Assembly: GCA_965644295.1 (NCBI GenBank)
Contig: CBFFRP010000146.1
Location: 248,001-312,000 of the forward strand
Length of the DNA: 64,000 bases
Direction: 5' to 3'
Source: Paraphysomonas bandaiensis
Taxonomy: Eukaryota; Protista; Chrysophyceae
The position numbers and the translations under genes are program-made. The notes below the pieces were generated by a model that was given only the letters and a program-made list of their open reading frames with translations, had not been told where the DNA came from and ran no database searches. How positions within the stretch are numbered: position 1 is the first letter of the stretch; the number at the start of each line of letters is the position of its first letter. Of the stretch, positions 29,450 through 34,545 are shown piece by piece.

Positions 29450-31758
29450 CTACTTCCCTTCATCCAAAGCGCTATCACCTCTGAAGGTAAATGCTTCAAA
29501 ATTGGGGTTCACTTCACCTTTCTTCTTCTCGACCACAGAGTCCCGTGCTTCCGCTTGTAAATATGTCTTAGGTACATACTTGGTGTCAAACTCGTTCACA
29601 ACATCTGGACGGAAAGGCGGCACAATCTCTCTGCGGTAAAGCGCCTCAAAGTCGATAGGCGCAAAAAAAGCAGTCTCCATAATATCACGTGCTCCTCTAG
29701 GACCTGACCCCAGACGATCTTGCTCAGATATATTGAGTAGCGAACGTATGCAGTCACAGGCCTCAGTTGAAAACTGAGGAGGAAAGCTGGGAGCTGTGTT
29801 GATGATGCGGTAAAACATGAGCTGATATAAACATAACATCAGTCAGTGGGTATGACAGCAGGTCTCAATACTACACCTTCCTATTCTTGTCATAAAACGG
29901 AGTACGGCCGTGCATCATCTCGAACAGAAGTATACCAAAGCTCCACCAGTCTACAGGGGCACCATATTTTTGTCCCTTCAGTAATTCAGGGGCAATATAC
30001 TCAGCAGTTCCACAGAATGTAGTGGCGCCCCCAGTCAGATCGATATTCTGTTTCGACAGACCAAAGTCAGTAAGGGCAATGTGCCCCACATTGTCCATAA
30101 GAACATTCTCTAGTTTTAGGTCCCTGTATATAGCGTCAGAAAACAATTCGAGAAGTCAAATAAGTTTACCTGTAAATTATATGCTGCTGGTGTAGGTGAT
30201 CCAATGCAGACAGCAGTTCTGCAGCATAAAATCTGGCCCTTTCCTCGGAGAATGCTCGGCTCTTCCGGAGGTGGTAAAATAAAGAGCCACCATTATAGTA
30301 ATCAGTCACTAGATAGAGCTTATCGTCACTCTGAAATGCAAATCGTAGACGCACAATATATGGGTGTCTTATCTCACACAAAATAGACCGCTCGCTTTTC
30401 GTATGCTCGATCTGACCTTTGGCAGATATTACGCTCTTCTTCAGAACCTTCATTGCGTAAATCTGCCCTGCACCTTTGTTGGCTTTCTTCCGCACAAGCA
30501 TCACCTTGCCAAATGCGCCCTTGCCAACGACCTTCAACAGGTCGAAGTCAGAGACAGCGAGAGACTCTTCCAGCTCAGACCCGATATTCATATCTGAGGC
30601 CGACGTGCGCTTTCCTGGCGGTGCCCGGGGAACTCCAACAGGTGTCTCCGGAGACGGAGCTGACGCAGGTTTTCGCCCAAGAAGACGAGAAAAAATTCCC
30701 ACCTTCGCTTGGCCCGCTTCTGCAGTCCCTGCGGATGGATCAGGGGTCGACGGAGCATCAGGGGCAGAAGTAATTTCTGCCTGGCTCGGATCTAGACCTT
30801 CACCAGAGGCCACAGCAGCACTGTATGACACCGCAAGGTTGCGTACGCTGCTGAATGCCATCTCCAGGTATTTGAAAGCAGGATCAAGGGCCATCGGAAT
30901 GCTGGTGGCCACATTCTGAATGGAATCGGGGTGCGCCCCAGGCGGCAGACCCAGGGAGAGGGTTACACAACCGAGTTTGTCCGCCCGATACTTGAGCCTA
31001 TATCCACGGGGGGCTGTACTTTGTTCCATATTTACAGCCATAGTTTTCAAAAACTTCTTGAAGTCCGCGGCATCGTCATCCTCAACTATAACGCTCGCTT
31101 CGATGGCACAGAAGGCGATTATCCTGTTTGTCTCCATCTCGTCTTCACGAGACCGTACCATCTGTCGGATGATAATGTCTTTGCACAAACTTGCGCCGTT
31201 GCCGTAACTCAGAAGAGCAATCTGCTCGATATGATCGGCTTTCGATATAATATTATTCCAAACAAACAGAGCATGCATCTCAGGTGACTCGGAACCATTA
31301 ATAGGGATCTTTTTCGGGGCTACAGTAGGGTTCTCCTGCACAGATACGCTGTTGGTATTCGCCCGCAAGACCATGACCGCATATCCAGCCTTCTGAGCAC
31401 GCTGAATATAAGGAAGCATAGAACCCTTAGATAGACCATGTTCCAAACATAAAGATCTACTGAATATACCCATCATTGATCCCACCGCATTCTGAACAAT
31501 TAATAATATTCTAGGGTTGGTTGACCAATCAGATGTCGCCAATATCGATGTCGATATCTCAGCTTCATCATCTGGAATAGCAATCTTCTCAAATCCCATA
31601 TCATGAATCATTTTAGCTTGTACATATCTAGCGATTTCAGTAAGTACTTCAAGTTCATCGGACATGGTTTGTTCTGGTGCTTGTGCGCGACGCACAACAC
31701 GCTCATCGTCCATTAATACATAATTAGGATGGTTAAACACTGCTGGACTATCCGACAT
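29450..31758 (-). CDS. Arb2/FAM172-like domain fused to an AGC kinase (Akt/SGK/S6K-like)
   Basis: N-terminal RILLIVQ...[38 protein letters not shown]...SPEMH...VW. Kinase [39 protein letters not shown]; hydrophobic motif FEAFTF. 3 exons. Confidence 0.88.
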
Positions 31759-33075: not shown

Positions 33076-33625
33076 GTGGTCAAGATTTATTTTGGTGTAG
33101 ATTGTAGATAGTACATATTAATCAATACAAATTGATTAACAACCTTGAATTCTGTCTTGACTGTGGTGTATGGGCTACACTAATCGTTTGGATACTCTTA
33201 GAAGTAGCATTTCGTTTTAAATACTATTCCAACTACGGTTACTATAAGCATACATTTTTTACGCAACAGATTCTAGAATTATTAGTCCTGCACAGATATG
33301 CTGCTCCCATGGTGTATTAATTTGAAGTAGTAGATACAAATACTCTGTGTTGCACATCCAAGAGTCATATAGTCATATATTTTATATATGATTATACTAG
33401 TGAGATAGAAGATAAAGAACGGCAATTGAACAGAATACACGCGTGAATTATGTTTTCCTGACAAGGAGATTGTACACTCTGTATATAATTCATTGAAACA
33501 CTACAACTGCTGCCAGTTATACAACATCGCCTTTTATTAATATTCCTTCGCTATGCTATCTACAATCTACAATATATAAGCCACATATTAAATATCCCAA
33601 CTGACTAACATATTAAACGTGCTCC

Positions 33626-33678
33626 CATCGCGATATTATCAGAGGCAAATATGTGCCACGTCATTCATACCCGCAATG
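33626..33678 (-). promoter_or_regulatory. Candidate atypical SECIS-like hairpin in 3' UTR
   Basis: mRNA sense CAUUGCGGGUAU-GA-AUGAC-GUGGCA-CAUAUU-UGCCUC-UGAU-A-AUAUCGCGAUG: ~11-bp lower helix, AUGA/GA core, short upper helix; starts 11 nt after the UAG of the UGA-containing ORF. Confidence 0.5.
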
Positions 33679-33689
33679 TGTAGCTTGTA

Positions 33690-34175
33690 CTACAACAAGT
33701 AATCCGGTATATCAATAGATAATTTAGACAAAGCTTCCCGCATAACATCCCGCACCTCGTTCAAGTGATCAGCTCCAAGAATTTGAGATGTGGCCGAAAT
33801 TACATTTTCACCTTCGGAATCGATAATCCGAAGGTATCCCCATCAGGAGTGGCTCAATCCCGCACCCCACTTAATCATTGCTTGATTACGACTGGGGTCT
33901 CTCCGATCCCATGTATTAAACGCGCAAGGAATAAACAATTCTTCAGCAGCTCGTTTAATTCCCGGATCACAAAAGATTGATCCCGCTCGCTTACATCCCT
34001 GTCATCCACTCCACTCCACGAAATTCGCGAATATTGGTTTCCCCTGTCGCCTGGCTTCCTCCACAGCTACCTCATAACTACCGTGCTTTAAGTCATCAGA
34101 AAGGTTAATATAATTGATTGTCCCTAATTCAACATATTTCGTTGTCATTTTCTTTTTCGTGTTTCTTTGACCCAT
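33690..34175 (-). CDS. Thioredoxin-fold selenoprotein candidate (UxxC), 161 aa, two in-frame TGA
   Basis: Manual translation MGQRNTKKKMTTKYVELGTINY...AVEEARRQGKPIFANFVEWSG-U-QG-C-KRAG...AAEELFIPCAFNTWD...LSHS-U-WGYLRIIDSEG...LSIDIPDYLL-TAG. TGA at 34002-34004 (codon 58) and 33843-33845 (codon 111). Confidence 0.8.
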
Positions 34176-34258
34176 CAGTGAAGACTTTCACAGCGCTTTA
34201 AGTTAGTCTTAACCCAAATCTACAAGAACAACAACTAGATCTTGAAGCAACAGCAAAA

Positions 34259-34494
34259 TACATACATACATACATACATACATACATACATACATACATA
34301 CATACATACATACATACATACATACATACATACATACATACATACATACATACATACATACATACATACATACATACATACATACATACATACATACATA
34401 CATACATACATACATACATACATACATACATACATACATACATACATACATACATACATACATACATACATACATACATACATACATACATACA
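34259..34494. repeat. (TACA)n microsatellite
   Basis: Perfect array between the divergent genes starting at 34175 (-) and 34546 (+). Confidence 0.98.
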
Positions 34495-34545
34495 CTGCCT
34501 CATATCTAGTTGCAGATTTGGGAGTTTGAGTCGTGTAGGTACATT

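What the first reader, a model, noticed from the sequence alone, without database searches (positions are those of the whole stretch)
33690..34175. Hidden UxxC thioredoxin-fold selenoprotein missed by the ORF caller
Seen: ATG at 34175 to TAG at 33690 is a 162-codon frame broken only by TGA codons. The first TGA sits at the thioredoxin active-site position, after a helix-strand unit (AVEEARRQGKPIFANFVEWSG-U-QG-C), and Trx-like sequence continues afterwards (AAEELFIP.AFN, LRIIDSEG). Known: UxxC replacing CxxC is the hallmark of redox selenoproteins. The ELG...KPIF..F.E..GU..C pattern recalls bacterial 'VPGUxxT'-type thioredoxin-like selenoproteins rather than the classical eukaryotic families (recollection, not a search result). 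Inference: an intronless, possibly bacterially derived selenoprotein family in a protist.
Basis: partly seen in the sequence, partly recalled or inferred. Interest (0 to 1): 0.85.

Follow-up and report, generated by a model that had tools for sequence, protein, structure and literature searches.

The report
Two-selenocysteine thioredoxin-fold gene in a diatom
This is a real, transcribed gene for a small thioredoxin-like enzyme that carries two selenocysteines encoded by UGA "stop" codons; its family is conserved across diatoms but is truncated or mistranslated in the sequence databases searched.

Summary
Window 33690-34175 (- strand) is a 162-codon frame with exactly two in-frame TGAs, at codons 58 and 111. 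Both lie at the same aligned positions in about 14 distinct orthologues, which come from diatoms and one labyrinthulomycete. Protein conservation continues after each TGA. Cys homologues exist for both sites. Site 1 is the first Cys of a CxxC motif, giving U-x-G-C. Site 2 lies two residues before strand beta-3, where thioredoxins have their cis-Pro loop, and is Sec, Cys or Asp in different homologues.

The genome has tRNA-Sec, SepSecS and other Sec genes (GPx, MsrB, SelT, GILT), and TGA otherwise acts as a stop. RNA contigs from three studies give an unspliced mRNA (about 33517-34202) that holds both TGAs. AlphaFold gives a confident thioredoxin fold.

The match is only 30-48 bits against a cut-off of 275, so this gene is a remote relative, not a member.

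The weak point is the SECIS. The roughly 165-nt 3'UTR holds only one kink-turn hairpin. It has this genome's SECIS core (GA-AUGA-CG...UGA-U) but an unusually short upper stem and no apical AA.

First-stage notes flagged similar small SECIS elements elsewhere in this genome. The family was not found in the algal selenoproteome papers available here.

The parts
33690..34175 (-). Complete coding sequence: 161 residues plus a TAG stop, no intron, two Sec codons
   Evidence: Database protein P0143 is this same frame translated with W at both TGAs. RNA contigs are collinear with the genome.
34002..34004 (-). TGA codon 58 = Sec1, at the position of the N-terminal (nucleophilic) Cys of a CxxC motif, giving U-Q-G-C
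   Evidence: TGA in all Sec-type orthologues. Cys at this site in L019, L029, L033, P0123, P0129, P0132, P0151, P0153 and P0160. It aligns to the first Cys of the CHWC motif of PDB 3ira. It is the N-cap of helix 59-69 in the model.
33993..33995 (-). TGT codon 61 = resolving Cys of the UxxC motif
   Evidence: Conserved as Cys in Sec-type orthologues. It aligns to the second Cys of the 3ira CHWC motif.
33843..33845 (-). TGA codon 111 = Sec2, two residues before strand beta-3 (the cis-Pro-loop position of the thioredoxin fold)
   Evidence: TGA in all Sec-type orthologues, and also in L019, where site 1 is Cys. It is Cys in P0151 and Asp in P0123, P0129, P0132, P0153, P0155, L029 and L033. In the model, strand 113-118 follows directly.
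33690..33692 (-). True terminator, TAG
   Evidence: All 10 distinct Sec-type orthologues tabulated end in TAG or TAA, never TGA.
33620..33684 (-). Candidate SECIS, non-canonical and very short. Helix I is CAUUGCG/CGCGAUG (33672-33678 / 33626-33632). The 5' core is GA-AUGA-CG (AUGA = 33661-33664) and the 3' core is C-UGA-U (UGA = 33639-33641). The upper stem is only about 6 bp, with a CAUAUU loop and no AA.
   Evidence: It is the only AUGA...GA kink-turn hairpin inside the transcribed 3'UTR. The fold is -20 kcal/mol, z = -2.4. The core signature is shared with SECIS candidates of this genome's GPx, SelT and MsrB genes. The pattern GAATGAC..TGAT occurs twice in 128 kb of window sequence, both strands counted. 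Function is not shown.
33533..33538 (-). AATAAA poly(A) signal
   Evidence: Sequence. The RNA contigs end 4-16 nt downstream, at 33517-33529.
33517..34202 (-). Extent of the mRNA as seen in assembled RNA contigs: 5'UTR about 27 nt, 3'UTR about 165 nt
   Evidence: X1 covers 33517-34202, X2 covers 33528-34202, and X3 (a poly(A) metatranscriptome) covers 33529-34185. There are no joints, and both TGAs are unchanged.

Best explanation
The gene encodes a 161-residue cytosolic-type thioredoxin-fold oxidoreductase. It has no signal peptide, and its N-terminus is MG plus a polybasic stretch. Both in-frame UGA codons are read as selenocysteine.

Sec58 sits at the nucleophilic position of a U-x-G-C redox motif at the N-cap of helix alpha-1, and Cys61 is the resolving residue. 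Sec111 sits in the loop just before strand beta-3. In thioredoxin-fold proteins this loop (the cis-Pro loop) packs against the active-site Cys. The inferred mechanism is that Sec58 attacks an oxidised substrate and the intermediate is resolved through Cys61 and/or Sec111, as a selenenylsulfide or a diselenide. Alternatively, Sec111 supplies the anionic group that Asp supplies in the Cys-type homologues.

Recoding is driven by a SECIS in the roughly 165-nt 3'UTR. The only candidate is a very short kink-turn hairpin 14 nt after the TAG.

Shown: the gene, the two conserved TGAs, the fold, transcription, and the Sec machinery. Inferred: actual Sec insertion, the chemistry, and the function of the short SECIS.
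For: Conserved stops and downstream protein
- 109 of 113 database fragments stop at the same residue.
- About 14 distinct orthologous DNA sequences carry TGA at both positions, with 50-80% protein identity after each.
- Piece 2 alone finds family members at E down to 4e-18 among 1.84 billion proteins.

Substitutions at the two sites
- Cys replaces Sec at site 1 in at least 9 homologues and at site 2 in P0151.
- L019 has Cys at site 1 and TGA at site 2.

Stop-codon usage
- Sec-type genes never end in TGA.
- TGA is a normal stop here: 7 of 14 long open frames in the window end in TGA, and Trp is encoded by TGG.

Sec machinery and other selenoprotein genes in the genome
- tRNA-Sec scores 69.6 bits and ARAGORN calls it SeC with anticodon TCA.
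- SepSecS scores 426 bits; SelD matches exon by exon.
- GPx, MsrB, SelT and GILT genes have TGA at their catalytic sites.

Transcription, fold and SECIS
- RNA contigs from three studies, including poly(A) RNA, cover the unspliced gene with both TGAs.
- The AlphaFold model has pLDDT 89 and pTM 0.84. Foldseek hits are DsbD-gamma, DsbH, ERp19 and AGR-type thioredoxin folds.
- Orthologues have ordinary AUGA...GA SECIS stem-loops in their 3'UTRs.
- The window's hairpin carries this genome's SECIS core signature.
Against: - No validated SECIS tool was available. Rfam SECIS_1 finds nothing here, but it also finds nothing above threshold anywhere in this genome or in the Seminavis orthologue.
- The window's hairpin has only 19-20 nt between AUGA and UGA, against 30-44 nt in the genome's other candidates. 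It has no apical AA.
- A general kink-turn scorer expects 0.06 such hairpins per 170 nt, so the element alone is only suggestive.
- There are no protein-level data.
- The three-dimensional proximity of the two Sec residues is inferred from the secondary structure of the model and textbook thioredoxin geometry. It was not measured.
Confidence: 0.85

Rival explanations
1. The family is a genuine two-Sec selenoprotein, but this species' copy is decaying. Its SECIS has lost most of helix II and no longer works, so translation ends at codon 58 or 111.
For: The hairpin is much shorter than any SECIS candidate of the orthologues and than most in this genome. It lacks the AA motif. MAFFT does not align it to the SECIS of L016 or L018.
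Against: The frame is intact after both TGAs and keeps every invariant family residue. The gene is transcribed and polyadenylated. The only two substitutions seen between strains fall on third codon positions. The hairpin keeps the genome-specific core on both strands and a 7-8 bp helix I. A second Sec gene of this genome (GPx, L038) has a similarly small element.
Confidence: 0.08
2. The TGAs are ordinary stops. The gene is a pseudogene or encodes only a 57-residue peptide, and the downstream open frame is chance.
For: Standard gene callers stop at codon 58.
Against: Conservation after both TGAs holds across many species. Both stops are always TGA and never TAA or TAG. Cys homologues exist. 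The fold is only complete when both codons are read through.
Confidence: 0.03
3. TGA is read as Trp or another standard amino acid (alternative genetic code or near-cognate readthrough), as the database translations with W suggest.
For: About 20 database proteins show W at both sites.
Against: For P0143 those W residues are TGA in the DNA, translated by a code-4 caller. TGA ends 7 of 14 long frames in the window, and Trp is TGG. Homologues have Cys, not Trp, at these sites. The genome has Sec machinery.
Confidence: 0.02

Closest known systems
VPGUxxT family thioredoxin-like (seleno)proteins, types 2 and 1 (NCBIfam NF041383 / NF041382). These are bacterial; review PMC13188914 lists them as 'hypothetical protein OS_HP5', with one Sec.
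   Same: They are the best and almost the only NCBIfam hits: E 3.7e-7 for the window protein, 1e-11 for P0151 and 1e-12 for P0132. The match spans the whole thioredoxin domain, residues 33-160. Both have a thioredoxin fold with Sec directly after a P/S-G dipeptide; some orthologues read ...PG-U....
   Different: The score is 30-48 bits against cut-offs of 275 and 350. The bacterial models are 287-349 positions long, against a 130-residue domain here. The motif is U-x-G-C here, not U-x-x-T. The bacterial family is listed with one Sec, this one has two. The eukaryotic signature motifs FNTWDR and S-U-WGYLR found no bacterial genome. No bacterial sequence could be fetched for a residue-level comparison.
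Pfam Thioredoxin_7 (PF13899) and the DsbD-gamma / DsbH / ERp19 / AGR structural group
   Same: The fold matches (Foldseek probability 1.0, TM 0.5-0.68 by target). The alpha0-beta1-CxxC layout is shared. The Cys/Cys homologue P0151 passes the Pfam cut-off (28.9 against 27 bits).
   Different: The window protein scores 16.8 bits, with W standing in for Sec. Identity to solved structures is 10-20%. No cis-Pro is evident; Sec, Asp or Cys occupies that loop. There are extra conserved N-terminal (ELGTI.Y.NL) and FNTWDR motifs.
Selenoprotein L (UxxU diselenide, fish and invertebrates) and other multi-Sec redox proteins. SelL is from my own knowledge (Shchedrina et al. 2007). PDI_e (GUGUU) and UxxU SELENOW are from PMC7539508.
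   Same: These are thioredoxin-fold proteins with two Sec residues that could form a diselenide, both decoded from one mRNA.
   Different: In those proteins the Sec residues are within 1-3 residues of each other in one motif. Here they are 53 residues apart, on two different active-site loops, and a Cys also sits in the UxxC motif.
'Thioredoxin-like protein' / 'TlpA' entries of the algal selenoproteome catalogues (Lobanov 2007, PMC2375036; Jiang 2020, PMC7539508)
   Same: They are thioredoxin-like selenoproteins reported in Thalassiosira and other algae. They could be the same family under another name.
   Different: The catalogue family is described as homologous to a bacterial selenoprotein, shared with Ostreococcus, and (for TlpA) linked to a hemerythrin domain. 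It is not listed among the multi-Sec proteins. The motifs of this family are absent from the supplements available here. Identity could not be tested.

Membership tests
Eukaryotic selenoprotein gene | In-frame TGA conserved at the same position in orthologues | tested here: met
   Both TGAs are conserved in about 14 distinct orthologous DNA sequences. 109 of 113 fragments end at site 1.
Eukaryotic selenoprotein gene | Protein conservation continues downstream of the TGA | tested here: met
   Invariant residues F86, T88, W89, D90 and R91 follow site 1; G113, Y114 and R116 follow site 2.
Eukaryotic selenoprotein gene | Cys-containing homologues align at the Sec position | tested here: met
   Site 1 is Cys in at least 9 homologues. 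Site 2 is Cys in P0151 and Asp in 7 others.
Eukaryotic selenoprotein gene | SECIS element in the 3'UTR | tested here: inconclusive
   Orthologues have AUGA...GA stem-loops, some of them two. The window has one short non-canonical kink-turn hairpin carrying the genome's core signature. Rfam SECIS_1 detects no SECIS anywhere in this genome. SECISearch3 was not available.
Eukaryotic selenoprotein gene | Sec machinery present in the genome | tested here: met
   tRNA-Sec, SepSecS at 426 bits and SelD exon matches. Other genes have Sec-TGA codons. eEFSec, SBP2 and PSTK were not searched.
Eukaryotic selenoprotein gene | Selenium found in the protein | not testable with these tools
   This needs 75Se labelling or mass spectrometry.
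Pfam Thioredoxin_7 (PF13899) | Score at or above the gathering cut-off (27 bits) | tested here: not met
   The window protein (W at the Sec sites) scores 16.8 bits. The Cys/Cys homologue P0151 scores 28.9 bits. The fold agrees.
NCBIfam VPGUxxT thioredoxin-like selenoprotein, type 2 (NF041383) | Score at or above the curated cut-off (275 bits) over the 287-position model | tested here: not met
   Scores are 30-48 bits, covering model positions 8-137 only.
NCBIfam VPGUxxT thioredoxin-like selenoprotein, type 2 (NF041383) | V-P-G-U-x-x-T active-site motif | tested here: not met
   Here the motif is W-S-G-U-Q-G-C. Orthologues have [WF]-[SPTAEQ]-G-U-x-G-C.
Selenoprotein L-type diselenide proteins | UxxU motif | tested here: not met
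   The motif is UxxC, and the second Sec is 53 residues away.

The most novel reading that the evidence does not exclude
An undescribed eukaryotic (stramenopile) selenoprotein family whose active site is built from two selenocysteines on different loops of a thioredoxin fold: the CxxC position and the cis-Pro loop. These would form a diselenide or a Se/Se/S relay, or the second selenolate would play the role of an active-site Asp. In this diatom the gene would be recoded by an unusually short SECIS lacking the apical AA, possibly one of a class of mini-SECIS elements in this genome.
Probability: 0.35. Interest if true: 0.75.

Novelty: new variant of a known kind. Interest (0 to 1): 0.6.

Why it matters
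- **Annotation.** The family is truncated at the first UGA, or mistranslated with Trp, in the protein collections searched here. Diatom selenoproteomes are therefore probably undercounted.
- **Active-site chemistry.** A Sec in the loop that normally holds the cis-proline, swapping with Asp or Cys in relatives, is an unusual natural experiment. It bears on what selenolate contributes next to a UxxC centre.
- **SECIS limits.** If the short hairpin works as a SECIS, it lowers the accepted minimum for eukaryotic SECIS elements. It would also explain why standard SECIS models miss genes in this genome.
- **Selenium in the ocean.** Diatoms are major marine primary producers and need selenium, so each added selenoenzyme bears on trace-element limitation.

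Tried and rejected
- **Rfam.** A scan of the locus and of the Seminavis 3'UTR found no SECIS. SECIS_1 over the whole genome reached at most 22.6 bits. The model does not detect SECIS elements in this genome, so this is not evidence of absence.
- **Covariance model of diatom SECIS.** MAFFT anchored the 5' AUGA but not the 3' GA (A4). No usable structural alignment resulted, so no model was built.
- **Homology of the window hairpin to the proximal SECIS of L016 and L018.** The alignment does not support it, so the idea was dropped.
- **Paralogues in the genome.** None were found.
- **Close bacterial relatives.** A pattern scan of 185,579 species' genomes found none. An exhaustive HMMER search with piece 2 found only 20 proteins. 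The 11 sequences read all carry this family's motifs.
- **First read-laying run.** It was repeated beside the repeat, as the tool advised.
- **Literature.** The Gobler 2013 Aureococcus paper is not available here. The available supplements of PMC7539508 and PMC2375036 do not contain this family's motifs.
- **Polymorphism.** Tara Oceans contigs L053-L055 are 100% identical to the window, so they give no polymorphism data on the hairpin.
- **Neighbouring genes.** An Arb2-kinase and a JmjC protein flank the gene; they give no functional link.

Full report
**Observation**

On the - strand, ATG at 34175 opens a 162-codon frame that ends at TAG 33690-33692. It is interrupted only by TGA at codon 58 (34002-34004) and TGA at codon 111 (33843-33845). 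The three pieces read:
- ...AVEEARRQGKPIFANFVEWSG
- QGCKRAGSIFCDPGIKRAAEELFIPCAFNTWDRRDPSRNQAMIKWGAGLSHS
- WGYLRIIDSEGENV...DIPDYLL

**Is TGA a sense codon in this organism?**

No. Of 14 open frames of at least 250 codons in the window, 7 end in TGA. Trp is encoded by TGG, at 1.5% of codons. The genome (62.5 Mb, 669 contigs) has the following Sec components:
- A tRNA-Sec scoring 69.6 bits, which ARAGORN calls SeC with anticodon TCA.
- SepSecS at 426 bits.
- Exon-wise SelD matches.
- Other genes with TGA at the known catalytic position: four GPx, two MsrB, SelT (CTS-U) and GILT (YYESQ-U-PGC).

**Comparative evidence**

- **N-terminal piece.** It finds 113 short predicted proteins, and 109 of them end exactly at ...KPIFANFVEW[S/T/P/E/A/Q]G. 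Gene callers therefore stop at the same place in many species.
- **DNA of orthologues.** I read Seminavis robusta (L011) and 22 metagenome or metatranscriptome loci (L013-L034). In every Sec-type copy both stops are TGA at the same aligned positions, and conserved protein follows each.
- **True terminator.** It is TAG or TAA in all 10 distinct Sec-type sequences tabulated.
- **Piece 2 alone.** It retrieves family members at E down to 4e-18 among 1.84 billion representatives. There are only 20 hits in all, and the 11 whose sequences I read carry the family's motifs.
- **Site 1 variants.** Site 1 is Cys in L019, L029, L033, P0123 (Epithemia), P0124, P0129, P0132, P0151, P0153 and P0160.
- **Site 2 variants.** Site 2 is TGA even when site 1 is Cys (L019, CAGC...S-TGA-WGY). 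It is Cys in P0151 and Asp in the Cys-type forms (S-D-W-G-Y).
- **Database proteins with W at both sites.** For P0143, which is the window's own product, the DNA has TGA at both W positions. These W residues are a code-4 calling artefact.
- **Named sources.** They are diatoms (Seminavis, Skeletonema, Amphora, Entomoneis, Helicotheca, Cyclophora, Epithemia) and the labyrinthulomycete Aplanochytrium.
- **Copy number.** The gene is single-copy in this genome.

**Expression**

Assembled RNA contigs from three studies, one of them a poly(A) metatranscriptome, lie at 33517/33528/33529 to 34202/34185. They have no joints, and both TGAs are unchanged. A DNA-like contig spans the whole stretch. The mRNA is therefore unspliced, with a 5'UTR of about 27 nt and a 3'UTR of about 165 nt that ends just after AATAAA (33533-33538). 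The only substitutions in the CDS (33963 and 34101) fall on third codon positions. Contigs cannot prove strand or exact ends, so this is good but not perfect evidence.

**Fold**

I built an alignment of 29 family members (A3). AlphaFold2 on it gives pLDDT 89.3 and pTM 0.84. The secondary structure is:
- alpha0, residues 34-44
- beta1, residues 48-53
- alpha1, starting at residue 59
- beta2, residues 82-87
- two short helices
- beta3, residues 113-118
- beta4, residues 125-128
- alpha3, residues 135-151

Foldseek's best PDB matches are thioredoxin folds of the DsbD-gamma, DsbH, ERp19 and AGR type, plus 3f9u. A profile search aligns U58 and C61 with the two Cys of the CHWC motif of 3ira.

Sec58 is therefore the attacking residue of a UxxC centre. 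Sec111 lies two residues before beta3, the place of the cis-Pro loop. In thioredoxin-fold proteins this loop contacts the active-site Cys; that is established knowledge, and I did not measure the distance in the model.

**Mechanism (inferred)**

The protein would be a thiol/selenol oxidoreductase. Sec58 would form a selenenylsulfide with Cys61, or a diselenide with Sec111. The U/C/D alternation at site 2 suggests that an anionic or nucleophilic group is needed there.

Many orthologues, including this one (MGQRNTKKK), start with MG followed by a basic stretch. That is compatible with N-myristoylation and membrane association, but I did not test it.

**SECIS**

Orthologues carry ordinary AUGA...GA stem-loops, and L011, L016, L017 and L018 appear to have two each.

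In the window's transcribed 3'UTR the only kink-turn candidate lies at 33620-33684:
- Helix I is 7-8 bp.
- The 5' core is GA-AUGA-CG and the 3' core is C-UGA-U.
- Only 19-20 nt lie between the two core strands, the upper stem is about 6 bp, and the loop has no AA.
- It folds at -20 kcal/mol, z = -2.4.

The same core, [GA]A-AUGA-CG ... UGA-[UA], flanked by 6-9 bp helices, appears downstream of this genome's GPx, SelT and MsrB genes, with 16 to 44 nt between the core strands. The GAATGAC...TGAT pattern occurs only twice in 128 kb of window sequence, both strands counted. A generic scorer expects 0.06 such hairpins per 170 nt.

Rfam SECIS_1 detects nothing above threshold in this genome, and I could not build a usable covariance model. 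I take the hairpin as the probable SECIS, but it is unproven. First-stage notes on other pieces of this genome independently flagged 'miniature' SECIS elements. I confirmed one comparable case, GPx L038.

**Comparison with known families**

- **NCBIfam.** The bacterial VPGUxxT thioredoxin-like selenoproteins (NF041383 and NF041382) are the top hits. Beyond these two, only trx7_PDZ_seleno appears, at E 0.075 for P0151. E-values are 4e-7 for this protein and 1e-11 to 1e-12 for Cys-type homologues. The scores are about a tenth of the cut-offs, the bacterial models are twice as long, the motif differs (UxGC against UxxT), and that family is listed with one Sec (PMC13188914). This gene is a remote relative, not a member.
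- **Pfam.** Thioredoxin_7 is passed only by the Cys/Cys homologue P0151.
- **Bacterial origin.** No close bacterial relative was found, so a bacterial origin cannot be judged.
- **Algal selenoproteome catalogues.** PMC2375036 and PMC7539508 list a 'thioredoxin-like/TlpA' family and discuss multi-Sec proteins (PDI_e, UxxU SELENOW, SELENOJ). They do not describe a protein of this kind, and its motifs are absent from the supplements available here. Prior cataloguing under another name cannot be excluded.

**Verdict**

The gene is a genuine, expressed selenoprotein gene. It is a new variant of the UxxC thioredoxin-fold kind, because it has a second conserved Sec in the cis-Pro-loop position and, in this species, an unusually short SECIS candidate.

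Noticed in passing
L011:2662-2748 and L011:2860-2950 (Seminavis robusta). Also seen in L016, L017 and L018.: Several orthologues seem to carry two SECIS-like stem-loops in one 3'UTR, both starting CUGA-AUGA-CC and ending GUGA-CAAG in Seminavis. To my knowledge, two SECIS elements in one 3'UTR are otherwise best known from selenoprotein P. Here it accompanies a two-Sec protein.
   Followed up: partly
L038:2149-2196 (G000 contig C41), L043, L035, L037, L042, L046, L047: SECIS candidates of this genome's GPx, SelT and MsrB genes share the core [GA]A-AUGA-CG ... UGA-[UA]. They are compact, with 16-44 nt between the core strands, and several lack an apical AA. The GPx gene in L038 has a hairpin even smaller than the one studied here. 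Rfam SECIS_1 misses all of them.
   Followed up: partly
L046 (G000 contig C19), about 0-270 nt after the MsrB stop: The end of the MsrB coding sequence and its 3'UTR, including the SECIS-like stem-loop, are tandemly duplicated. The two near-identical copies lie about 148 nt apart.
   Followed up: no
window 34259-34500: A long (TATG)n microsatellite of about 60 units ends about 55 nt upstream of the 5' end of the mRNA contigs, inside the presumed promoter region.
   Followed up: no
window 33558: All four runs laid on the window (three RNA, one DNA-like) lack 7 nt here. This is one unit of a 7-nt tandem duplication in the 3'UTR, so it is a strain polymorphism outside the SECIS-like hairpin.
   Followed up: partly
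window 34146-34175 (N-terminus) and alignment A3: At least 9 of 29 aligned family members, plus the loci L016 and L022, begin with MG followed by a hydrophobic-basic stretch (MGFFGRKKK, MGQRNTKKK). This looks like a myristoylation plus polybasic membrane anchor.
   Followed up: no
P0114, P0134-P0150 and others (database proteins): About 20 public predicted proteins of this family carry W at both Sec positions. For P0143 this was shown to be TGA translated under genetic code 4, which is a systematic annotation artefact for eukaryotic selenoproteins in metagenome gene calls.
   Followed up: partly
window 30166-31758 (- strand): An open frame fuses an N-terminal Arb2 domain to a protein kinase domain. 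The frame continues into further exons downstream.
   Followed up: no
L011:977-1441 (- strand): In Seminavis a glutaredoxin gene lies head-to-head about 560 nt upstream of the orthologue. No such neighbour exists in this window.
   Followed up: no
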